Virus record (IMG/VR): IMGVR_UViG_3300046542_000227
Location: 1-64,000 of that record
Length of the DNA stretch: 64,000 bases
Strand: one strand, 5' to 3'
Both the position numbers and the translations under genes were made by a program. Below are positions 5,254 through 20,264 of the stretch, in pieces. The stretch's first letter is position 1. Each line of letters opens with the position of its first letter. The notes beneath the pieces are model-generated. The model was not told the DNA's origin, did no database searches, and worked only from the letters and a program-made list of their open reading frames with translations.

Positions 5254-8406
<3,153 letters not shown>

Positions 8407-10297: not shown

Positions 10298-10330
10298 CGG
10301 CATAAAGCCCGCCGAAGCGGGCCGTATGTT
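10298..10330 (-). terminator. Intrinsic terminator, TTTATGCCG family
   Basis: Minus strand AACATACG-GCCCGC-TTCG-GCGGGC-TTTATGCCG right after the endolysin stop. Confidence 0.85.
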
Positions 10331-11175
10331 TAGACGTAGGACGAGTACAGTTTGAAGGCATCCGACAGTTTCGTGTCGTACTGGTTTTCCTTATAAGCAG
10401 CACCGTTATACAGCCGTGCCACCTCAGCCCAGTTAAGGGCCTTGAGTGCATTCCAGAGTCCTTTCTGGCTCTTGATGAAACGCACGAAGCATTCGAGTTG
10501 ATTCGCCTCGCTCAGCGAGATGAACTTCACGAAGTCAGTGACGGAGTCAAAGCCAAGCAGTTCCCAGTGGAAACCCATGATCTGGTACGCACCCCATGAG
10601 CACGATTCCCAGGCAGCTTCCTTACTGATCTTCATGGCATTCTCAAGACGCAGCCACTCCTTCTCCCCACCCAGGTAACCACCACGAGCGGTGTTTACTA
10701 GGCCGGGCTGCTCCCGCATTGCTTTAGCCGGGTCTACCCCATAGTCCTTCACTTCACGATACATGATGTGGCGTTCATACAGAATCGCCACTTTGCCGCT
10801 TGGCAGGAAGCCAGTACCTTTGGACTCAACCGAGTTCACTGCCATCACAGCAGCGGTAGGTACCCCCAAAGACTTCGCTGCAGCAGCAATGTCATCCTGG
10901 CACAGATACTTGTGGGACTGCTCAGCCGAAGCCAAGAGCCCCATCGTTTTTGGACCGACCACGCCATCGACGACCAACTTAGCAGTCTTCTGGAAAGCGA
11001 TTACGGCATCGTAAGTCTTCTGCCCAAAGCCACCATCGGGAGTCCCGATGTCGTAGCCTGCGTTCATTAAGTGTTTTTGCAGATCGATGACTGCTGGGCC
11101 TTTATCCCCTCGTCGCAATACCGCGTCTTTGAGGAACGTGGCCCGGTGTTCGACGCCTAGCGCTTCTGTCGTCAT
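10330..11175 (-). CDS. Modular endolysin: PG_binding_1 domain plus DUF3380-type N-acetylmuramidase
   Basis: LRRGDKG..V..LQ..L...GY.....DG.FG..T..AV.AFQ....L.VDG.VGP.T; ILYERH catalytic region; SWG.YQIMGFHW..LG. Confidence 0.9.
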   Translation of the reverse strand: MTTEALGVEHRATFLKDAVLRRGDKGPAVIDLQKHLMNAGYDIGTPDGGFGQKTYDAVIAFQKTAKLVVDGVVGPKTMGLLASAEQSHKYLCQDDIAAAAKSLGVPTAAVMAVNSVESKGTGFLPSGKVAILYERHIMYREVKDYGVDPAKAMREQPGLVNTARGGYLGGEKEWLRLENAMKISKEAAWESCSWGAYQIMGFHWELLGFDSVTDFVKFISLSEANQLECFVRFIKSQKGLWNALKALNWAEVARLYNGAAYKENQYDTKLSDAFKLYSSYV

Positions 11176-11196
11176 CTTAAGTTTTCCTTGCTGTGT

Positions 11197-11745
11197 TTAT
11201 TGGTTCTCCAATCGACGCGTTATTCCGTTTTCAAGCAGGCGCACGGTGCCGTCCTCAAGTAGTCGGAGTCCGAGTTCTTCTGGAGTAGTGTTGACGTAGA
11301 TGGGAACCCAGCCGTAATAAGCAAAGCTCGTACCGAGCATGATCAGCGTATAGACGGTGGCATTATGTTTCGTCATGGGTTGATAGGACACCTCCACATC
11401 ATCGTGGTTTAGGTGCATGTTGAACTTACGGTTGATCTCAGCAACGACCTTAGCCGAAGTGATGGTACCATCGAGTTCGATCCGTACGAACGGCTCATCC
11501 TCGGCGGTGTATTCGCGCAATACTTTGGCGATGTCCAGACGACGGAACAGGAACGGGCGTTTCTTACCCGTCCGCAGGTTAGTCATCTCGATATAGGTAC
11601 GACCTGGCTCCTCCTCGCTGGGGGAGAAGTACATGTCTTCAAACAGGACATAATCGTCCAGCAACTCTTCGGAAGGCCGATCGCGTCGGATCAGCTCAAC
11701 CAACGCCTGCCGTGATGGTAGGTCGAAGGGAAAACGCAGGCTCAT
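11197..11745 (-). CDS. phiKZ-family virion structural protein (baseplate-attachment-type domain)
   Basis: F.RLDI...EINRKFNM.L..DD...S..YYG pattern, also at the N-terminus of 38411..40114; C-terminal RLLEDG/RLLENG repeat. Confidence 0.55.
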   Translation of the reverse strand: MSLRFPFDLPSRQALVELIRRDRPSEELLDDYVLFEDMYFSPSEEEPGRTYIEMTNLRTGKKRPFLFRRLDIAKVLREYTAEDEPFVRIELDGTITSAKVVAEINRKFNMHLNHDDVEVSYQPMTKHNATVYTLIMLGTSFAYYGWVPIYVNTTPEELGLRLLEDGTVRLLENGITRRLENQ

Positions 11746-11807
11746 GACGAGTCCTCATGAAAGTGAAATTGGCACATAGCATTATCCCAGACGGCAAAAA
11801 CCCCCGC

Positions 11808-12245
11808 CTATGCGGCAGGGGCTGGGGTTGCTTGTTGTGCGTCGGACCAAAGCTGTGCAACAAACTTCAGTAGATCAAAGAACTGAGTGAGGGTGAACTT
11901 GAAGATATCCCACATCTCAGGACTGATGGTAGTGTCGCCGTAAACCACCGCCATGGCCAAAACGATCACTACCAGTGTAAGCGTAGCTGCACCAAACAAC
12001 ATGACCTGCTTGTACAGATCGGTTCCACGGACCACACCCAGGTTGTGTTCGAGCAACGCCGTACGTTTGGCTTCGTTCACAATCTTGTAAACTTGGCTGA
12101 GTACGATGTAACCCGGGGTGTCCTTATCGATGGTGCTCCCCTTCTTCCCCAGAGATGCCAGCACAATCGCCCGTATTGCGGCCGAGTATGGACTGGAGTT
12201 AAGTGGTCTATCACCGAGAGAGATCAGCGCCTCCTGCAGTGTCAT
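11808..12245 (-). CDS. Membrane protein, holin candidate (likely start MTLQE at 12245)
   Basis: One strong TM (VMLFGAATLTLVVIVLAMAVVY) plus an amphipathic C-terminal helix; GGAG RBS 7 nt upstream; lies between spanins and endolysin. Confidence 0.45.
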   Translation of the reverse strand: MTLQEALISLGDRPLNSSPYSAAIRAIVLASLGKKGSTIDKDTPGYIVLSQVYKIVNEAKRTALLEHNLGVVRGTDLYKQVMLFGAATLTLVVIVLAMAVVYGDTTISPEMWDIFKFTLTQFFDLLKFVAQLWSDAQQATPAPAA

Positions 12246-12630
12246 GGGTATTCTCCAATGTGGTGGTCTGTTTTTCATACCAGCCATTGAGTGCCTGAAT
12301 TTTGTCGTTGCAGAGTCCGACTTGTTCAGTTTGCTTAGACCACTCGTCTTGCATCATCAAGGCGATGGCTTCCCATTGGGACTTTGCCTTCGGAAACTTA
12401 ATGTACGCAGTTAAGATGTCATCAACGCTGGGTGGTTCACTTGGTTGGCAGGCCGTCAGCATTACCTTTGGTGGGACACGTATCACGGTTGTCGTATGCT
12501 CGACAATACGTGCGGCGCATCCCGTTAACGAGAGCAGCAATAGCGTCAGGATCAGGATTAGTATCCACGCCCACCACTTTGGCTGGCGCTGTTTTGGTTG
12601 GTTGGTGTCCGTTAACTGCAACGTCGACAT
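12211..12630 (-). CDS. o-spanin (Rz1-like outer membrane lipoprotein)
   Basis: Hydrophobic signal ending in lipobox LTGC; Pro/Cys-rich mature part; GGAGG RBS 9 nt upstream; overlaps i-spanin C-terminus in another frame. Confidence 0.75.
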   Translation of the reverse strand: MSTLQLTDTNQPKQRQPKWWAWILILILTLLLLSLTGCAARIVEHTTTVIRVPPKVMLTACQPSEPPSVDDILTAYIKFPKAKSQWEAIALMMQDEWSKQTEQVGLCNDKIQALNGWYEKQTTTLENTHDTAGGADLSR

Positions 12631-12979
12631 CTCCCTTAGCCTCCGGCTTGGTGTATGTAGTGGGTGGATCCTTACTATCGCGAGCTGCGAAGTATTCTTC
12701 GAGAGTCTTGGCGCGATACCCTAATGCTTCTTCTACTTTAAGCTCTCGCTCATAGGTGTATTCAAACACCGCTTGGTCCGTGATCACAGCTGCCTTATGC
12801 TCAGTGGCCACTGCCTCAGTGAGGGTTTGGTTCTGAGTAGTCAGGTTCTGTGTGGCTTCCTCCATACGTCCATAGTTCTTTACAAGTGCTATGAACGTCC
12901 CCACCGCGAACACCACGGCAAGAATACCCACCCATTCAAACCAGGGCAGCTTCCTTAAAAGTGTAAACATAAAATTCAC
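12437..12979 (-). CDS. i-spanin (Rz-like)
   Basis: N-terminal TM (WVGILAVVFAVGTFIALV), then coiled-coil and a C-terminal Cys pair; overlapped by a lipoprotein gene. Confidence 0.7.
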   Translation of the reverse strand: MNFMFTLLRKLPWFEWVGILAVVFAVGTFIALVKNYGRMEEATQNLTTQNQTLTEAVATEHKAAVITDQAVFEYTYERELKVEEALGYRAKTLEEYFAARDSKDPPTTYTKPEAKGDVDVAVNGHQPTKTAPAKVVGVDTNPDPDAIAALVNGMRRTYCRAYDNRDTCPTKGNADGLPTK

Positions 12980-12988
12980 GCCTCAGGG

Positions 12989-13600
12989 TTAAATAACCTT
13001 CCCGGTGTGCAGGTCGATCAGAATGGTCGGAGACCAACCCATCTGCAGTAACTGCATCAGGTGATAACCAATGGCCACAGCATCGACGCTGTGCTCATCC
13101 AGGCTGTCGATATCAACACCCCAAACAATGTCAGTTCGTTTCTTCAGAGCGCGGGTTACGTCCATTTTATCTTTGAACTTACCTACTACTCCAGCGGCTT
13201 TCTTGGCAGACATTGGGTCAACCATTAATAGCGGCATGGTAGGATCGTAGCGATACAACACATTCCGAATAACCGCCACGCATTCCACGAGGGTTGCATA
13301 CGCATCTGCGAAACGACCCTTGTAGTTAGATTCGCAAATCACCATGTGGGGACGGAACTCTTCGAGGATATCCCCGAGGCTGTCGTCTAAGTGATAGAGA
13401 CGGGCAATGCGATCAGTGCCCATCTCACGAATCTTGCAATAACGCTTATCACTATCGGGAAACTTCAAGGTGTAAGAATCCACCATGTGAAACGAAGTTG
13501 TCCCGATATCCCAATGCCAATGGGCAATACCCGTGTTGTAGCTGCCCGGGTCTATGGATAAGACCCGCAGTGGCTCGTTACTTTCGGGTAACGTGAACAT
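12989..13600 (-). CDS. ruvC: RuvC-like Holliday junction resolvase
   Basis: VLSIDPGSYNTG (D), VICES (E), EHSVDAVAIG (D) RNase H-fold catalytic motifs. Confidence 0.85.
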   Translation of the reverse strand: MFTLPESNEPLRVLSIDPGSYNTGIAHWHWDIGTTSFHMVDSYTLKFPDSDKRYCKIREMGTDRIARLYHLDDSLGDILEEFRPHMVICESNYKGRFADAYATLVECVAVIRNVLYRYDPTMPLLMVDPMSAKKAAGVVGKFKDKMDVTRALKKRTDIVWGVDIDSLDEHSVDAVAIGYHLMQLLQMGWSPTILIDLHTGKVI

Positions 13601-14490: not shown

Positions 14491-14547
14491 GTGTTGCTCC
14501 TCTTGAGGGAAAAGGCTAAATGGTTCTGTATGATTGTACAAACAAGT

Positions 14548-14582
14548 TATAAAAGCCTCCCCGATTGGGGAGGCTTATGTCG
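14548..14582 (-). terminator. Intrinsic terminator, CATA...TTTAT family
   Basis: Minus strand CGACATAA-GCCTCCCC-AATC-GGGGAGGC-TTTTATA after the stop of 14583..15083. Confidence 0.8.
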
Positions 14583-15083
14583 TCAAGTGAAATCGGACAA
14601 CTTGCCCTGAACCATCGTGTTCGCCCACAGAGCGTCCAGCTTAGATTTCTTCACTTCATGCAGACACGAGACACGGAATGCAATCCCGTCACCTGCGTTC
14701 AGGATGTGCTTCTCATCATTGATGGTGATGTTCTGCCCGTCCTTAAGTGCGTATGCCACGATGATCGCAGCACGATCACCCGCATCGACCCAGGTGTTCA
14801 TCAAATCCAAGAACCCGTCATTCTTCGGGAACTCCAGGAAATAACCCACCAAGGCTTTGGTCACCGACGGACGATTGGCGAAAGCATCTTTGAAACGCTT
14901 ACGCTGATCAGCTGTCCACTTGAACCAGCGAGTGTCCTTATAGACGCTCAGGTTCTCAGCGACGTTGGCGCCCACACGCCGACGCATCGACGTAGCAAAG
15001 CGCGGATTGAATTCCGTGTACAGAGCACGCAGGGCTTCAACAGCCTCGGGCTCCAACTTCGGAAGGTGAGCAAATTCGGTCAT
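14583..15083 (-). CDS. Degenerate 2OG-Fe(II) oxygenase/cupin-fold protein
   Basis: YFLEFP..DGFLD (no HxD His), IIVAYAL, AGDGIAF, LHEV; same layout as the neighbouring oxygenase. Confidence 0.5.
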   Translation of the reverse strand: MTEFAHLPKLEPEAVEALRALYTEFNPRFATSMRRRVGANVAENLSVYKDTRWFKWTADQRKRFKDAFANRPSVTKALVGYFLEFPKNDGFLDLMNTWVDAGDRAAIIVAYALKDGQNITINDEKHILNAGDGIAFRVSCLHEVKKSKLDALWANTMVQGKLSDFT

Positions 15084-15093
15084 ACGGACTCCG

Positions 15094-15576
15094 TTAATCG
15101 TAAAGGAAGATGGCCACGTAACGCAGCGACTTTACCTGTGGGACTTCATGTGGTGAACTCACGTTGGTAAAGCACACCCCTTCTCCCAACACATCTGGAT
15201 AGAACTCACCATCCACAGTCACCCCGTCACCATCAGCACACAGCGGGATCACCAGATTCTTCCGGTAGCGCTGTACGTCGATATGCTCAGGCATGTAATC
15301 GCCCGGCTTGTATCGGTTGATGATGGCTTCGATAACAGAGAGGCCAGGATACTCGGGTGCCAAGGAGCGCAACAATGCGTTGAACTCCTTAGGTTGCTGG
15401 CGGTCACCGAGGAAGTCATAACTGGCCGCTGTCCCTTGGGTCGTAGGCCTGCTATTGATCTTCACTCGATGGAACCAACGGGCTTCATGCATTTCAGCTA
15501 ACTGTTGTCGCAGGTCGTCACAGACGTCCTTAGAAAACTGTGCCACCTGTAATTTGTTTAGCGCCGTAGGCTTCAT
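15094..15576 (-). CDS. 2OG-Fe(II) dioxygenase (prolyl/lysyl-hydroxylase-like fold)
   Basis: INRYKPGDYMPEHID (HxD), LVIPL, PHEVP (distal His), RY (2OG-binding Arg); start uncertain (15576 or 15492). Confidence 0.8.
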   Translation of the reverse strand: MKPTALNKLQVAQFSKDVCDDLRQQLAEMHEARWFHRVKINSRPTTQGTAASYDFLGDRQQPKEFNALLRSLAPEYPGLSVIEAIINRYKPGDYMPEHIDVQRYRKNLVIPLCADGDGVTVDGEFYPDVLGEGVCFTNVSSPHEVPQVKSLRYVAIFLYD

Positions 15577-16156
15577 GCAAACCACCTTCCAGTTGAGCTT
15601 CTTGTGCGGCTGCTTCATCTGCCAACGAGTAGTAGATGTAGTCGCTAGAACCGGCGTAGTATTCTTTACGCAGGTTGTTGGCCGTTTTGACCTCGGTGAC
15701 GTAGTCGTTCATCTCATCGAGAACCTTCAACGCCGCCGCCAGATCAGCATCAGGTTTGTCGCCCAACAGCCCCTGCACCACACGACCGATCTGTTCGATC
15801 GCATTACCGATGTTGTTGACTTGGTTGATCACCGGGTATTGCTTAGTGATCTTCTGCTGAGCCGCCAGATCGAGTTGGCTTTCATACATCACCAGCTCAG
15901 CTTGTTCACGATTGACTACGGTGTAATCAGGGTAAGTACCCCGCACCTCGTCAGTGTGGAAGTCGAAGTTATCGTGCTCTTCATAAATGAAGAAGTCGTT
16001 GTTCAACGTGGCTGGATCTACCCAGCCGATCACCGCCGTGAAGGCACCGCTGATCTTGTTGAACTGCAACAGAACCTTGGTCCCACCGGTTGGCAACGAT
16101 GCGATAGCCGCAGAAACCGTTGTGGTACCAGATGTTGGGATTTGTTCTTCAGACAT
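15530..16156 (-). CDS. Tail-fibre-associated protein (chaperone-like)
   Basis: Directly downstream of the fibre genes; acidic and helical; function from context only. Confidence 0.5.
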   Translation of the reverse strand: MSEEQIPTSGTTTVSAAIASLPTGGTKVLLQFNKISGAFTAVIGWVDPATLNNDFFIYEEHDNFDFHTDEVRGTYPDYTVVNREQAELVMYESQLDLAAQQKITKQYPVINQVNNIGNAIEQIGRVVQGLLGDKPDADLAAALKVLDEMNDYVTEVKTANNLRKEYYAGSSDYIYYSLADEAAAQEAQLEGGLHEAYGAKQITGGTVF

Positions 16157-16171
16157 TGTGGATCTCCAGAA

Positions 16172-17518
16172 TTAAACCAGCCAAGCAGCCCAGCCGCCAG
16201 CGGTACGAATAAGGAATTTGACTTCAGGCAGTTGCCAGACAGTGTAAGCCGCCGCTTGCCGGTAACCCATAACCACAGCCTTACAACCCACTGGGTAGGC
16301 ATTGAGGTCAGTGAACCAGGTGTTCAGGTAGTTGATGGCCGCTTGCACGTTGTAGCCAGCCACAGCGGTACGTACATACACGATCGGACTACGGTTGACC
16401 TGAGCATTCATCTCGTTGACGAGAGTCATGTAGCTCTTCCACGTCCCGTTACCCATCAACACAGTACCGGTGTTGGCCACACCACTGCCGAGGGCAGCGT
16501 TAGGGAACAGACCCTGAGTCACCAAGTCAGCCGAAAGACCTGCGTTGCAGTAATTCTTCCAAGCCACCTTAGTGTAGCCAAAGATGTTCAGACTATTTTG
16601 TGCTGGCGTGTCTTTCTGCAGTCGACCCACGAGCGACGTGTTGATCTGAACCTTGGTGTAAGCGTTCACATCCTGAGCACGTACACCGTGTGGGTTGTTG
16701 AAGTTCGAGACGTGTGCGTTGAAGGCTGGCGTCAAGATACTACTGATCGCATTCTGGCCCGACTCAGGCGTCGAGTAGTACGTATCAAGGGTCTGGTTGA
16801 GCGATTCAGACAACAACACCATCCGCCAGTTCTGGATGTTGCTCAGACCGAGCTTCACCTTGTCGTCAGCGTGTGGGTTGTTATAGTCACTGAGGTGGTT
16901 AGTCAGCAGGGTCTTCTCTGCAGCGAGCAAATCCTTAGACTGCTGGAGATAACCGTCAGCGAAGTCTTTGAGTCCCTGCACCATCGCATCATCGTTCGAA
17001 CCCAGCAGATCACGAACCCGGTTCAGCACGGTGATGGTGTTATCCGCACCGTACAGCTGCCAGTATTCATCGTAGTGATCCTTAGGGTTAAACGCCGTAG
17101 GCTTGTTACGAATGTCTTCGTACGCCACCGTGAAGTCAGACGGGTCGAGTGCATCGAGCATGTCCGAGAGTTCATCGGTGTTCAATGCAAAGCTACCACC
17201 GACGGCTTGGTAGTTGAGCACGACAGTGTTAGACACTGCTTCGTTGGTGATCACGATGAAGGCGTAGATTGGCTTAGACGCCAACTTGGACATATCGCGA
17301 TATAGGTAGGTGGTGGTGTAATCCGTGCCCGGTACCAGACGACGGACGCCGTCGAAGATACGCAGGCTGGCATCATTAAAGAAGGCACCAAAGCGAGGAA
17401 TCAGAACACGGTTCTTTTGGCCAGTGACCTTAACCAGTGTTCGACTCTCGTTCTGGACCTTGTTCGATGCCTTGGTGCCCTTAAGGTCCAAGGGCAAAAG
17501 CGTGAGCATGGCCATCAT
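16172..17518 (-). CDS. Tail fibre / baseplate fibre, NPH-motif family
   Basis: Family N-domain plus H...NNPH motifs plus variable C-terminal tip. Confidence 0.75.
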   Translation of the reverse strand: MMAMLTLLPLDLKGTKASNKVQNESRTLVKVTGQKNRVLIPRFGAFFNDASLRIFDGVRRLVPGTDYTTTYLYRDMSKLASKPIYAFIVITNEAVSNTVVLNYQAVGGSFALNTDELSDMLDALDPSDFTVAYEDIRNKPTAFNPKDHYDEYWQLYGADNTITVLNRVRDLLGSNDDAMVQGLKDFADGYLQQSKDLLAAEKTLLTNHLSDYNNPHADDKVKLGLSNIQNWRMVLLSESLNQTLDTYYSTPESGQNAISSILTPAFNAHVSNFNNPHGVRAQDVNAYTKVQINTSLVGRLQKDTPAQNSLNIFGYTKVAWKNYCNAGLSADLVTQGLFPNAALGSGVANTGTVLMGNGTWKSYMTLVNEMNAQVNRSPIVYVRTAVAGYNVQAAINYLNTWFTDLNAYPVGCKAVVMGYRQAAAYTVWQLPEVKFLIRTAGGWAAWLV

Positions 17519-17525
17519 GGGCTCC

Positions 17526-18872
17526 TTAAAGAGGTTGCCAGTTTACGGTGTCGACTTTCACCCAGCATTGCAGACGCCAAGCCGAACGACCTTCCGCCGC
17601 GTTACCTGCGTCCCAGTGACCATCGTAGTAGATCATCACCAAGCACAATGCGCCTGGAGGCCAGATCTGCGTACTAGCCATGGTCGCCTGCAAGATCGCT
17701 GCAATGTTGGCACCGTTAGCACCCTGCAGATACGCAAGCTCTGTACCACGACGGGCGTAGGCGTTGATCACTGCAGCCAAGTCTACAACTTGGTTATCAC
17801 CGGTCAGCGCATGCACCGCACTCAACCCACCAGCCAAGGTCAGACGACGGGTGTCGATACGGCCACTGGTCAGGTTGTTGGCATTCAGGTTAGTCTTGGT
17901 GTAGTTCATCAACTGCGACCAATCAGAACTTTCCAGACGGTAAGTACTAACAGCCGTTGCACCCTTGTCCAGACGGTCAGCCAACCCACCTTCAATTTCT
18001 GGGATGGTGTAGGTGTCCGCTTGAGACGCAGTAACCCGGTGTGGGTTATCCGTACGAGCAACGTGTGTATTAAAGTCAGTGAGGAAGTTCACGTCGAGCA
18101 TTTGTTTGAAACGCTGTACGGTGAGGTAACGCTGCTTGGAGTTAAAGCCAAGCGTAGTTGCTTCAGCCGACGTCACGATCGAGTAGTTCTCAACCGTACC
18201 CAGACTGACCTGTGCTGCCGTTAGGCGGTGTGGGTTATCTGCCGCCAAGTGTTGCTGTAGCTGCAACATCAGGTTATCGAACTCAGCGTTCAGGATATCC
18301 ATCTGGTTGTCGTAACCCAACTGGATCTGCTGGTAAGTACGTGCCGAGATCGCCAGCTTAGCCACGGTGATACGGTTGATCGCTTCAACCATACCTTCAA
18401 AGCCGTAGAGCTCCCACATCGCGTGCAGGTGGCCGCCGACCTCGAACTCATCGGGCTTGCCTTCGATGTTGCGCCACGTCGGGGTACGGGTTGGGTTGAG
18501 CAACCCTGCCGACATAGAAGCAATCGCTGGAATCAAGTCGCAGTACTTACCACCGACCATGCTGGCGTTGACAAACACTTCGGCTGAGACCCGTGGATTC
18601 AGGATCACAATTACCGAGCAGGCTTCGTAGCCGGTTTCGGCTGTAGCTTCAGCGGACAAGCCCACCATCTGGAAGTCTTCATCCGGTACCAGGTCATACC
18701 CGGTCGAATCTTCGATCTCCAGTTGGTCAGTATAGAAATGCCCGTTGTCCAGCACCAGCGTACGGTAAGTCAGACCCGCTTGGTTACGCAGATCGTGATA
18801 CTCACGTTGTACCCGGTTGCGCGGCAGTCGACGTGTAGAGTCGAATGGCAACGCGAAAATGACAGGCGTCAT
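17526..18872 (-). CDS. Tail fibre / baseplate fibre, NPH-motif family
   Basis: Same architecture; HLAADNPHRLTAAQV and HVARTDNPHRVTASQ. Confidence 0.75.
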   Translation of the reverse strand: MTPVIFALPFDSTRRLPRNRVQREYHDLRNQAGLTYRTLVLDNGHFYTDQLEIEDSTGYDLVPDEDFQMVGLSAEATAETGYEACSVIVILNPRVSAEVFVNASMVGGKYCDLIPAIASMSAGLLNPTRTPTWRNIEGKPDEFEVGGHLHAMWELYGFEGMVEAINRITVAKLAISARTYQQIQLGYDNQMDILNAEFDNLMLQLQQHLAADNPHRLTAAQVSLGTVENYSIVTSAEATTLGFNSKQRYLTVQRFKQMLDVNFLTDFNTHVARTDNPHRVTASQADTYTIPEIEGGLADRLDKGATAVSTYRLESSDWSQLMNYTKTNLNANNLTSGRIDTRRLTLAGGLSAVHALTGDNQVVDLAAVINAYARRGTELAYLQGANGANIAAILQATMASTQIWPPGALCLVMIYYDGHWDAGNAAEGRSAWRLQCWVKVDTVNWQPL

Positions 18873-18884
18873 GGTTTATGCCCC

Positions 18885-20264
18885 TTAGCCAAGAACGAAC
18901 CAACCCGTTTGCGTACGGATACAAGCTCGGAATGAGTTTTGGTAAACCGGGTCAAAACCACCGTTACCATAAACGTGGGTGTCGGCGTTCTGCACCTCGA
19001 AGATCACGCACGTACCCCATGGGTACCAAGCTTCGTTGGCAAAGGTCGTCCGGATGTTCGCCAGGCCAGTGTTGACATCGCCCTGATAACCCGCCCAGTA
19101 GATCTCGTCACCACCGCCCGCGGTTAAGAAGATGAACAAGTCATGCCAGTTCAACCACGAACCCGATGCAATAAAGACGGTCTCAGCCGATGGCGTACCA
19201 ATCCCCAGCAGGTAAGGGTTGACCTGCCCACTGTTGAAGTTAGCCGCATTCAAGTTAGCCCGCATCTCGTAGTAAGCTGCGAGTTGACCGAAGTTAACGG
19301 TAGCCCCTGGGTTAGACGCCGGCTGTCCCATGATCCCCGCTGCAGCGACCGCTGTGCCGTCTACCGGCAGTTTGGTTTCAATACGGGTATCGAAGGTCGA
19401 CTTGATGTAGGTGTTCAGCTGTGCGGCTGTAGGGCCGTGCGTGGTGTAACGCGCATCCAAGTGTTGCTGCAACGGCGTAGTCGCAAACTGGTTCTGCATG
19501 TCAAACACACCACGAGTCGTCAGGTAGTGTATAGCACTGGTACCAGCTTTGGCGGTTGGAGTATCAGCCACCGGATAGTTCACCACCAAGTTCAAGCCGA
19601 TGTCGGCCTTGTCGAGGTTGTGTGGGTTGGCATGGTCGTTGACGTGTGCACCGATCTGTCCAGTAAAGCGTGCCATGAATGCATGGTAGCGATCACGGAT
19701 GTCTTTACGGGCTACGTCTTCTGCCACACCATCACCCGAGGTAGTAGCTGCAGTGAGGCGCTCTACTGCCGAGTTGAGGTTACCGTAGTGTGGACGTGAC
19801 CACAGTTCTTCCTGTAGCTCACCGGGTTGCCACTGCGACTCATCACCGATAAAGCCTGCCCATGCTGGCGGGGTATTAGCCGGTAGCGTTTGCAGGTAAG
19901 CGATGGTGTCGTCTTCTACGGTCAGAGAGAAGGCATAATCAGCACCCACCAACTGACCACCCAACAGAACATAGTCGGTGATCGTTGGCTTGAGGATAAC
20001 CACAGCCGAACAGATCTCAATGCCGACATAAGCACTGGCGTCCAGATGTTTGTAGGTGGCGATATAGTCGACGCGCTCGGTCAACAGTTTAAAATTCTTG
20101 TCGTACACTTTGAGGCTTGGGGTATAGAAACCCCCTTGCGAGAATGACACAACCCGGTACGGAGTATTGCCCCGTGCCAGTAGGAGGTGCTTCTCACCGG
20201 ACACCAAGTTGGTCGGGCTCCGGCCCGTAAGATCCAACGGGTACTTGGAGATTACCTTGGCCAT
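18885..20264 (-). CDS. Tail fibre / baseplate fibre, NPH-motif family
   Basis: YPLDLTG.SPTNLV.GE.H N-terminus; HVNDHANPHNLDKADIGL. Confidence 0.75.
   Translation of the reverse strand: MAKVISKYPLDLTGRSPTNLVSGEKHLLLARGNTPYRVVSFSQGGFYTPSLKVYDKNFKLLTERVDYIATYKHLDASAYVGIEICSAVVILKPTITDYVLLGGQLVGADYAFSLTVEDDTIAYLQTLPANTPPAWAGFIGDESQWQPGELQEELWSRPHYGNLNSAVERLTAATTSGDGVAEDVARKDIRDRYHAFMARFTGQIGAHVNDHANPHNLDKADIGLNLVVNYPVADTPTAKAGTSAIHYLTTRGVFDMQNQFATTPLQQHLDARYTTHGPTAAQLNTYIKSTFDTRIETKLPVDGTAVAAAGIMGQPASNPGATVNFGQLAAYYEMRANLNAANFNSGQVNPYLLGIGTPSAETVFIASGSWLNWHDLFIFLTAGGGDEIYWAGYQGDVNTGLANIRTTFANEAWYPWGTCVIFEVQNADTHVYGNGGFDPVYQNSFRACIRTQTGWFVLG

What the first reader, a model, noticed from the sequence alone, without database searches (positions are those of the whole stretch)
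14583..16156. Active plus pseudo-active 2OG-Fe(II) oxygenase pair co-transcribed with tail fibres: candidate virion-protein hydroxylation system
15094..15576 has a full HxD...H...R set (PEHID, PHEV, RY). The next gene has the same layout (YFLEFP..DGFLD, GDGIAF, LHEV) but lacks the first His, so it may be a catalytically dead partner. Both end the tail-fibre operon, behind a chaperone-like gene. Prolyl/lysyl hydroxylases belong to this superfamily, and giant eukaryotic viruses hydroxylate their own collagen (mimivirus L230 on Lys). Possible substrates here are the GDK-rich collagen fibre or the H..D..NPH motifs of the fibres (inference). A phage-encoded enzyme/pseudo-enzyme pair modifying fibres would be a new system.
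Basis: partly seen in the sequence, partly recalled or inferred. Interest (0 to 1): 0.7.

Follow-up and report, generated by a model that had tools for sequence, protein, structure and literature searches.

The report
Tail-fibre-linked oxygenase, dead paralog, adaptor cassette
The two genes are a real intact 2-oxoglutarate/iron oxygenase and a catalytically dead copy of it; with the gene upstream they form a three-gene, non-virion cassette (phiKZ gp136-138) that follows one type of tail-fibre tip domain across many phages, but fibre hydroxylation itself remains unproven.

Summary
The 15576-15094(-) gene encodes a 160-aa double-stranded beta-helix (DSBH) protein. N87, Y89, H98, D100, H143 and R152 are invariant in close relatives and at least 90% conserved across the wider family. 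The 15083-14583(-) gene encodes a true paralog (hhalign 97.9%) in which H98 is W, R152 is A and the NxY motif is lost.

The window is a complete phiKZ-like jumbo phage. The genes are homologues of phiKZ gp137 and gp138, and the upstream 208-aa gene is gp136.

New here:
- All three form a conserved cassette, also present in small non-jumbo phage contigs.
- The cassette tracks the C-terminal (distal) domain of gp133-135-type fibre proteins, not their N-terminal anchor. That domain is absent from eight cassette-less relatives.
- The homologues are absent from the 201phi2-1 virion proteome, and gp136/gp137 are not named in the phiKZ cryo-EM atlas text.
- Published phiKZ Tn-seq shows insertions tolerated in orf137 but none in orf136 or orf138.

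The likeliest role is a fibre-tip maturation module with an accessory hydroxylase. The RefSeq name "DNA endonuclease" is unsupported. No hydroxylation has been shown.

The parts
18885..20264 (-). Fibre paralog A (459 aa), of the phiKZ gp133-135 type. The C-terminal domain that travels with the cassette is about 18888-19364.
   Evidence: phrog_2163, E 5e-99. It is paralogous to the next two genes. Homologues are virion proteins in 201phi2-1 and form the fibre base in the phiKZ cryo-EM atlas. C-terminal domain profile.
17526..18872 (-). Fibre paralog B (448 aa). C-terminal domain about 17529-17975.
16172..17518 (-). Fibre paralog C (448 aa). C-terminal domain about 16175-16621.
15530..16156 (-). 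gp136-like protein (208 aa), an orphan family and the first gene of the cassette. Its 3' end overlaps the oxygenase start by 47 nt.
   Evidence: phrog_13209. No Pfam or PDB relative. It lies directly upstream of every triad-intact oxygenase homologue whose upstream gene is in range. The overlap with the oxygenase gene is seen in phiKZ, 201phi2-1 and contigs L006-L008. It is not a virion protein in 201phi2-1.
15094..15576 (-). gp137-like protein, a small (160 aa) Fe(II)/2OG oxygenase with the motif NRY...HxD...H...R.
   Evidence: The start at 15576 (MKPT...) matches the family's N-termini and follows a GAAGGTGG ribosome-binding site.
14583..15083 (-). gp138-like protein (166 aa), a catalytically dead DSBH paralog of the oxygenase.
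14551..14576 (-). Terminator-like hairpin plus U-tract that closes the fibre/cassette transcription unit.
   Evidence: Positional equivalents exist in phiKZ and Noxifer. The phiKZ Tn-seq paper reports a transcription start site upstream of orf139.

Best explanation
The two genes and the gene upstream form a three-gene accessory cassette that is not part of the virion:
- a gp136-like orphan protein;
- a gp137-like active Fe(II)/2-oxoglutarate oxygenase, closest to the Pfam family PF13640 (2OG-FeII_Oxy_3);
- a gp138-like catalytically dead paralog.

The cassette is dedicated to the C-terminal (distal) domain of gp133-135-type tail-fibre proteins.

Proposed mechanism. The three proteins are made late from the same transcript as the fibres. 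gp136 and gp137 are translationally coupled through their overlapping genes. The proteins act in the cytoplasm on the newly made fibre tip. The dead paralog and/or gp136 supply binding or chaperoning. The 160-aa oxygenase has almost no substrate-binding elaboration of its own, and it oxidises (most likely hydroxylates) a side chain of the fibre tip or of an assembly partner.

Shown:
- folds, conserved catalytic residues and paralogy;
- conservation of the cassette;
- co-occurrence with the fibre C-terminal domain;
- non-virion status of the homologues;
- the operon end.

Inferred:
- physical interaction among the three proteins;
- the substrate;
- the chemistry.

Published phiKZ genetics suggest that the non-catalytic members matter more for plaque formation than the enzyme, so hydroxylation would be an accessory, fitness-level modification.
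For: 1. The oxygenase is intact. It has a DSBH fold, and its triad, Arg and NxY motif are conserved across a family whose mean column identity is 26%. The H143-to-R152 spacing is +9. From my own knowledge that is the spacing seen in PHD2.
2. The nearest named fold clusters are PF13640. Of 25 members, 21 hit PF13640 below its threshold.
3. gp138-like is a paralog that lacks the Fe and 2OG ligands in every lineage examined.
4. The order gp136-like, gp137-like, gp138-like holds in every locus where the oxygenase triad is intact and the neighbours are in range. That covers 16 phiKZ-like IMG/VR loci plus L006-L008 and L026-L031. In cultured phages the three proteins hit 71, 72 and 72 records.
5. 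All informative non-jumbo contexts are tail-fibre modules.
6. An iterative profile of the fibre C-terminal domain finds it in the gene next to the cassette in the phiKZ-like phages, L007, L026 and L008. It is absent from three cassette-less small-phage relatives (L003-L005) and from five cassette-less jumbo phages that keep the fibre N-terminal domain. L008 and L026 carry the C-terminal domain without that N-terminal domain. Counted by lineage the table is 4/1/0/7 (my Fisher exact calculation gives p about 0.01).
7. The homologues are not virion proteins in 201phi2-1, although the flanking fibre and gp139 homologues are. gp136 and gp137 are not named in the main text of the phiKZ 40-protein structural atlas.
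8. In phiKZ Tn-seq, orf131-136 and orf138-140 have 0 insertions. orf137 has 577 reads at 2 sites.
Against: - No modified residue has ever been reported, and nothing here shows catalysis on a fibre.
- gp137 is dispensable for phiKZ plaque formation by Tn-seq, and three antisense oligomers gave no phenotype. Any hydroxylation is therefore not required for assembly.
- The complex prediction for the pair gave no verdict.
- One cassette-bearing lineage (L029/L030) shows no detectable C-terminal domain. The L008 match is weak and appears with only two of three queries.
- Adjacent genes are co-inherited in mosaic phages, so co-occurrence could partly reflect linkage.
- Zero insertions in 500-600-bp genes, together with polar effects, leave the essentiality of orf136 and orf138 uncertain.
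Confidence: 0.45

Rival explanations
1. Chaperone-only module. The DSBH proteins and gp136 are tail-fibre assembly factors that work by binding. The oxygenase chemistry has nothing to do with the fibre: it is vestigial, regulatory (an O2, Fe or 2OG sensor), or acts on another target.
For: - Three family members have lost the triad and stand alone, directly after GP38-like adhesin or fibre genes and before the endolysin.
- gp138-like has been catalytically dead throughout its history yet is retained.
- phiKZ orf137 tolerates insertions, whereas orf136 and orf138 show none.
Against: The Fe and 2OG ligands are at least 90% conserved across a family with only 26% mean column identity. That argues for selection on catalysis. 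There is no similarity to any known chaperone family.
Confidence: 0.2
2. Host-directed or metabolic oxygenase. gp137-like hydroxylates a host protein (as Pseudomonas PPHD does with EF-Tu) or a small molecule, and its position beside the fibres is only genomic linkage.
For: - Structural matches to the Pseudomonas putida P4H/EF-Tu complex (Z 13.9-14.4) and to PiuC-type hydroxylases (Z 14.5-15.2) are as good as any others.
- All cultured carriers infect Pseudomonas.
- The gene is dispensable in the laboratory.
Against: - Synteny with the fibre tip domain is kept across very distant phages with different N-terminal anchors.
- It shares a late structural operon with the fibres, closed by a terminator.
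- It is always accompanied by the dead paralog and gp136.
Confidence: 0.12
3. AlkB-like nucleic-acid demethylase, or the 'DNA endonuclease' of the RefSeq/PHROG annotation.
For: - The best sequence matches in the PDB are ALKBH8 (E 0.003) and ALKBH5, over the NxY...HxD segment.
- PF13532 is hit below threshold by 19 of 25 members.
- phrog_2297 is labelled 'DNA endonuclease'.
Against: - There is no second Arg of the AlkB RxxxxxR motif; R152 is followed by YVAIFLYD.
- The nearest named fold clusters are PF13640 and none is AlkB.
- The protein aligns over only about 145 residues to 200-residue AlkB chains, which leaves little room for the nucleotide-recognition lid that I know from AlkB structures.
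- No nuclease family or fold was found.
- The conserved tail-fibre context is unexplained by this reading.
Confidence: 0.07
4. One reading: a lysyl or prolyl hydroxylase for the GDK-rich collagen-like fibre (5254-8406, minus strand), or a hydroxylase of the H..D..NPH motifs.
For: - Collagen-like GDK runs exist in the 1050-aa ORF, and D-K-G fits the X-Lys-Gly pattern that, from my own knowledge, lysyl hydroxylases use.
- Fold similarity to LH3 and to the chlorella-virus collagen prolyl hydroxylase vCPH is Z about 13.
Against: - The repeat composition is not conserved where the enzyme is. phiKZ has GPE/GPQ/GKD, 201phi2-1 has GTN/GTD, and the small cassette-bearing contigs have no collagen runs nearby.
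- Cassette-less phages match the fibre over the part where the NPH motifs lie in this window's fibres, by coverage only.
- The cassette tracks the fibre C-terminal domain instead.
Confidence: 0.05

Closest known systems
phiKZ gp136, gp137, gp138 (PHIKZ136-138) and their homologues in 201phi2-1 (gp221-223), PhiPA3 and Noxifer (NOXIFER_147-149)
   Same: Direct homologues in the same order after the gp131-135 fibre paralogs and before gp139 (DUF7208, a baseplate protein) and the RuvC-like gp140. Identity to the window proteins is 48% for gp137, 37% for gp138 and 32% for gp136.
   Different: None of them is functionally characterised. RefSeq calls gp137 a 'DNA endonuclease', which nothing here supports. 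The paper searches found no description of them as an oxygenase, dead paralog and adaptor cassette.
PF13640-type 2OG oxygenases (prolyl 4-hydroxylases, PHD2, Pseudomonas PPHD, PiuC/PKHD-type hydroxylases)
   Same: DSBH fold, Y-x-PG...HxD...H...(+9)R layout, VIA Z 14-15, and the nearest named Atlas clusters.
   Different: Scores are below the Pfam gathering thresholds. At 160 aa it has no obvious substrate-binding insert. It always comes with a dead paralog and an orphan partner, and it sits in a tail-fibre operon.
AlkB / ALKBH nucleic-acid dioxygenases
   Same: The NRY...HxD core motif, with the best PDB sequence hits. Fold Z is about 13.5.
   Different: It lacks the second Arg of the C-terminal motif, is about 40-50 residues shorter, and is closer in fold space to PF13640 clusters.
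Viral collagen hydroxylases (chlorella virus PBCV-1 vCPH; mimivirus L230, from my own knowledge)
   Same: A virus-encoded 2OG oxygenase proposed to modify the virus's own structural protein. vCPH is among the fold matches.
   Different: The collagen-like repeats of these phages are not conserved in their target residues. No glycosyltransferase domain was detected. The genetic association is with a globular fibre tip domain, not with collagen.
Tail-fibre assembly proteins (lambda/P2/Mu Tfa, T4 gp38 and gp57A)
   Same: Genes placed immediately after the fibre gene, absent from virions, and travelling with the distal fibre domain rather than the anchor domain.
   Different: No sequence or fold relationship. 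There are three genes, one of which is an apparently active redox enzyme.
Heteromeric 2OG oxygenases such as the fungal TlxI-TlxJ heterodimer (PDB 7vbq)
   Same: It shows that two DSBH subunits can work as a heterodimer. 7vbq appears among the fold matches of gp138-like.
   Different: It belongs to fungal small-molecule biosynthesis. Heteromer formation was not shown here (no verdict).

Membership tests
Fe(II)/2OG-dependent oxygenase superfamily (gp137-like, 15576-15094) | Double-stranded beta-helix (DSBH) core fold | tested here: met
   AlphaFold model with pLDDT 90. Foldseek E 1e-6 to 1e-4 against many 2OG oxygenases. VIA Z 13-15 over 140-152 residues.
Fe(II)/2OG-dependent oxygenase superfamily (gp137-like, 15576-15094) | HxD/E...H facial triad for Fe(II) | tested here: met
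   H98, D100 and H143 are invariant in 25 homologues. They are kept in all but 3 of about 105 retrieved family members.
Fe(II)/2OG-dependent oxygenase superfamily (gp137-like, 15576-15094) | Basic residue about 10 positions after the distal His that binds the 2OG C5 carboxylate | tested here: met
   R152 (+9) is the only invariant column in the 58-sequence family alignment.
Fe(II)/2OG-dependent oxygenase superfamily (gp137-like, 15576-15094) | Score above the curated Pfam cut-off of a 2OG family | tested here: not met
   PF13532 scores 19.6 bits against a cut-off of 31.2. PF13640 scores 15.5 against 27. The best family member reaches E 2.4e-6 for PF13640. It is a divergent member with no subfamily assignment.
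Fe(II)/2OG-dependent oxygenase superfamily (gp137-like, 15576-15094) | Fe(II)- and 2OG-dependent turnover | not testable with these tools
   This needs a biochemical assay.
AlkB family | NxY 2OG-binding motif 9 residues before HxD | tested here: met
   N87-R-Y89 precedes H98, and the motif is conserved. A Y-x-PG...HxD layout is also present in PHD2-type enzymes (my own knowledge), so the feature is not discriminating.
AlkB family | C-terminal RxxxxxR pair (R204/R210 in E. coli AlkB, from my own knowledge) | tested here: not met
   R152 is followed by YVAIFLYD. L158 and Y159 are invariant and there is no second Arg.
AlkB family | Nucleotide-recognition lid | tested here: inconclusive
   Only 160 aa, aligning over 143-146 residues to AlkB chains of about 200 residues. 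Model coordinates could not be inspected.
Collagen prolyl/lysyl hydroxylases | A conserved collagen-like substrate with the target residue (X-Pro-Gly or X-Lys-Gly) | tested here: not met
   GDK repeats in the window and Noxifer, GPE/GPQ in phiKZ, GTN/GTD in 201phi2-1, and none near the cassette in the small contigs.
2OG-oxygenase pseudoenzyme (gp138-like, 15083-14583) | Same fold as, and homologous to, an active family | tested here: met
   Model pLDDT 84.5, DSBH matches at E 2.5e-7. hhalign probability 97.9% against the gp137 family. One member, L028:538-1041, hits both profiles.
2OG-oxygenase pseudoenzyme (gp138-like, 15083-14583) | Loss of the catalytic residues | tested here: met
   H98 becomes an invariant Trp, D100 becomes variable, R152 becomes Ala or variable, and N87 and Y89 are lost. 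Only the distal His is mostly kept.
Tail-fibre assembly chaperones | Encoded directly downstream of the fibre gene and co-varying with its distal domain | tested here: met
Tail-fibre assembly chaperones | Absent from the mature virion | tested here: met
   201phi2-1 gp221-223 were not detected by mass spectrometry, while the flanking genes were. gp136 and gp137 are not named in the main text of the phiKZ atlas. This was checked on homologues, not on this phage.
Tail-fibre assembly chaperones | Sequence or fold similarity to a known Tfa, gp38 or gp57A family | tested here: not met
   No such hit in Pfam, PHROGs or the PDB.
Tail-fibre assembly chaperones | Required for fibre assembly | not testable with these tools
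   Only indirect evidence exists: zero Tn insertions in phiKZ orf136 and orf138, with the caveats of polar effects and small gene size.

The most novel reading that the evidence does not exclude
A heteromeric, phage-encoded protein hydroxylase made of an active minimal DSBH subunit, a dead DSBH paralog and an orphan adaptor. It would post-translationally oxidise the receptor-binding tip domain of tail fibres, tuning stability, adsorption or host range. It moves between jumbo and small myoviruses as one module together with that tip domain.
Probability: 0.3. Interest if true: 0.8.

Novelty: new variant of a known kind. Interest (0 to 1): 0.6.

Why it matters
Enzymatic post-translational modification of phage receptor-binding proteins is almost unexplored. 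2OG oxygenases are among the commonest phage genes with no known substrate.

This work turns three 'hypothetical' genes of the model phage phiKZ (one of them mis-named a DNA endonuclease) into a defined cassette with a specific candidate partner, the C-terminal domain of gp133-135. It also points to existing reagents (orf137::Tn mutants) that make the hydroxylation hypothesis directly testable.

If true, it would be a new layer of host-range or stability control. It would also be a rare enzyme/pseudoenzyme pair in the 2OG superfamily. If false, the cassette is still a new type of fibre-tip accessory module.

Tried and rejected
- **Complex prediction** for gp137-like plus gp138-like returned no verdict (score 0.00). 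It is not evidence either way.
- **Subfamily or substrate from structure.** Fold search cannot separate PiuC, PHD2, ALKBH6, P4H and AlkB; all score Z 13-15.
- **Wider locus searches.** The search for related loci with the broad family alignments failed for lack of a conserved stretch. With A1 it returned only phiKZ-like loci.
- **Fibre C-terminal domain alone.** tblastn found only Noxifer, so an iterative profile search on the fetched loci was used instead.
- **The gp136-like family and the fibre C-terminal domain** gave no Pfam, PDB or Atlas lead. One Atlas hint to Phage_tail_APC at 0.86 is too weak to use.
- **RNA evidence for co-transcription.** Only DNA metagenome runs were listed as holding this sequence (kind 'any'; a dedicated RNA search was not run).
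- **Literature.** Searches for gp137, gp138 and 2-oxoglutarate in phiKZ papers found no functional description. The ONT-cappable-seq paper has no held supplement.
- **The 'DNA endonuclease' reading** is rejected: there is no nuclease domain or fold.
- **The collagen and NPH substrates** are rejected as conserved targets.
Full report
**What the window is.** The window is the first 64 kb of a complete 267,320-bp virus record with direct terminal repeats, assembled from a rhizosphere metagenome. Its closest cultured relative is Pseudomonas phage Noxifer (78% nucleotide identity over part of the region), a phiKZ-like jumbo phage. On the minus strand the gene order is:
- three paralogous 448-459-aa fibre proteins (20264-16172; phrog_2163);
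- a 208-aa ORF (16156-15530);
- a 160-aa ORF (15576-15094);
- a 166-aa ORF (15083-14583);
- a DUF7208 protein;
- a RuvC-like resolvase.

The same order occurs in phiKZ (gp133-135, gp136, gp137, gp138, gp139, gp140), in Noxifer and in 201phi2-1.

**Checking the observation.** The 160-aa protein has 30 close homologues. In an alignment of 25 of them, N87, Y89, H98, D100, H143 and R152 are invariant.

A profile search of 1.84 billion representative proteins found only 82 hits, almost all 150-190 aa. This is a compact family that does not reach AlkB or P4H by sequence. The catalytic set is kept in all but three members. R152 is the only invariant column in a 58-sequence alignment whose mean column identity is 26%.

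AlphaFold models of both proteins are confident (pLDDT 90 and 84.5). Both match 2OG oxygenases.

The pairwise similarity of the two window proteins is weak (30% over 57 residues). With broad profiles, however, the two families align over 150 columns at 97.9% probability, and one member hits both profiles. In that alignment:
- H98 corresponds to an invariant Trp;
- D100 corresponds to a variable position;
- N87 corresponds to a gap and Y89 to Phe;
- R152 corresponds to Ala;
- only the distal His is mostly kept.

No gp138-like sequence from any lineage has HxD. 'Active plus pseudo-active pair' is therefore correct.

A 10-bp GC hairpin with a U-tract follows the last stop codon. Hairpins sit at the same place in phiKZ and Noxifer. 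This supports the reading that the pair ends the fibre transcription unit.

**What kind of oxygenase.** The fold search does not discriminate. PiuC-type hydroxylases, PHD2, ALKBH6, Pseudomonas P4H and AlkB all score Z 13-15. By sequence the best PDB hits are ALKBH8 and ALKBH5, but only over the NxY...HxD segment. Several points favour the PF13640 (2OG-FeII_Oxy_3) side:
- Family members hit PF13640 more often and with better E-values than PF13532.
- The nearest named Atlas fold clusters are all PF13640-type.
- The His-to-Arg spacing is +9, as in PHD2 (my own knowledge).
- The second Arg of the AlkB motif is absent.

The RefSeq/PHROG label 'DNA endonuclease' has no support.

**The cassette.** Neighbourhoods of distant family members were fetched, together with 16 IMG/VR loci. 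In every locus where the oxygenase has an intact triad and the neighbours are in range, a gp136-like gene lies directly upstream, usually overlapping, and a gp138-like gene lies directly downstream. This includes small contigs (12-34 kb) that sit in ordinary myovirus tail modules with collar-type fibres, a sheath gene or a P1 gp16-like gene.

The three family members that have lost the triad stand alone. They lie after a GP38-like adhesin or fibre genes, and before a GH108 endolysin.

In the cultured-phage collection, gp136-, gp137- and gp138-like proteins hit 71, 72 and 72 records, all from Pseudomonas phages.

**What the cassette travels with.** The fibre family's N-terminal part is far more widespread: 184 records from many host genera. 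The cassette is therefore not needed for that part. By coverage only, those matches extend over the stretch where the NPH motifs lie in this window's fibres.

An iterative profile of the fibre C-terminal domain (residues 301 to the end) gave a different picture.
- It found the domain in all phiKZ-like fibres, in the L007 fibre (E 1e-26), in the ORF just upstream of the cassette in L026/L027 (E 1e-10), and more weakly in L008.
- It did not find the domain in the cassette-less relatives L003-L005, nor in five cassette-less jumbo phages (Erwinia PhiEaH1, Ralstonia RP31, Serratia Moabite, Xanthomonas LucasX, Vibrio pVp-JHP1101). All of these carry the N-terminal domain.
- L008 and L026 have the C-terminal domain without that N-terminal domain.
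- L029/L030 is the one exception, a cassette with no detectable domain.

L007 (cassette) and L003-L005 (single dead copy) belong to one phage group with near-identical endolysins and fibre N-termini. They act as a natural swap experiment. By lineage the 2x2 table is 4/1/0/7.

**Independent experimental context from homologues.**
- In 201phi2-1, the fibre paralogs and the gp139 homologue were found in virions by mass spectrometry, but gp221-223 were not.
- The 2026 phiKZ cryo-EM atlas places gp131x3+gp133+gp134+gp135 at the fibre base and gp139 in the outer baseplate. It does not name gp136 or gp137 in its main text.
- In the phiKZ transposon screen, after trimming, orf131-136 and orf138-140 have no insertions, while orf137 has 577 reads at two sites. 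That is comparable to non-essential genes of its size. The authors warn about polar effects and note a transcription start upstream of orf139.
- Three antisense oligomers against PHIKZ137 gave no phenotype.

The catalytic member therefore looks dispensable in the laboratory. The dead paralog and gp136 may not be.

The 1050-aa ORF at 5254-8406 does carry GDK collagen-like runs. Its homologues, however, carry GPE/GPQ runs in phiKZ and GTN/GTD runs in 201phi2-1, while the enzyme is conserved. The small cassette-bearing contigs show no collagen runs. By coverage, cassette-less phages match the fibre over the part where the NPH motifs lie. Neither is a good conserved target. The fibre C-terminal domain is the better candidate. 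In a 21-sequence alignment it shows a mostly conserved GNG motif and a near-C-terminal Trp. No site can be named.

**Conclusion.** The best-supported reading is a non-virion, three-protein fibre-tip maturation module in which the oxygenase supplies an accessory oxidative modification. The link to fibres is well supported. The chemistry, the substrate and the physical complex are inferred; the complex prediction gave no verdict. The rivals are a binding-only chaperone role, a host or small-molecule target, and AlkB-like nucleic-acid repair. The first two remain open and the third is unlikely.

Noticed in passing
15094-15576 (-); phiKZ gp137 in L002:8962-9444: phrog_2297 and the RefSeq records of phiKZ, PhiPA3, Noxifer and others name this protein 'DNA endonuclease'. 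Every test here gives a 2OG-oxygenase fold and motifs, and no nuclease signal. The annotation looks wrong and is being propagated.
   Followed up: yes
L003:2438-2917, L004:6001-6477, L005:6001-6477: Three family members (P0085, P0106, P0124) have lost the Fe/2OG residues independently of gp138. They occur singly, directly after a PF05268 GP38-like adhesin gene or fibre genes and before a GH108 endolysin, in phages closely related to cassette-bearing L007.
   Followed up: partly
5254-8406 (-): The 1050-aa phiKZ gp146-like protein has several interrupted collagen-like runs rich in G-D-K. The repeat chemistry changes completely between relatives: GPE/GPQ in phiKZ and GTN/GTD in 201phi2-1.
   Followed up: partly
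15530-15576 (-): The gp136-like gene's 3' end overlaps the oxygenase start by 47 nt. Overlaps of 32-50 nt recur in phiKZ, 201phi2-1, L006 and L007 (4 nt in L008). This suggests translational coupling and perhaps a stoichiometric gp136-gp137 complex.
   Followed up: partly
14491-14541 (-): The DUF7208 (phiKZ gp139-like baseplate) ORF is listed from a TTG at 14541. An ATG at 14491, preceded by AGAGGAG, looks the likelier start. That leaves a roughly 90-nt intergenic region holding the hairpin.
   Followed up: no
16175-16621, 17529-17975, 18888-19364 (-): The fibre C-terminal domain has no relative in Pfam, the PDB or the Atlas. In a 21-sequence alignment a GNG motif is mostly conserved (at least 70% per position), and a Trp near the C-terminus is present in at least 90% of the sequences.
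   Followed up: partly
L028:538-1041: This gp138-like protein, next to a tail sheath gene, matches both the gp137 profile (E 3e-4) and the gp138 profile (E 2e-38). It is an intermediate that links the two families.
   Followed up: partly
10330-13600 (-): Downstream of the cassette lie a RuvC-like resolvase (12989-13600), small ORFs at positions that correspond to the phiKZ spanin and lysis genes (by synteny only, not analysed), and a 281-aa ORF (10330-11175) syntenic with the protein annotated as peptidoglycan-binding in Noxifer. The order matches phiKZ gp140-144.
   Followed up: no
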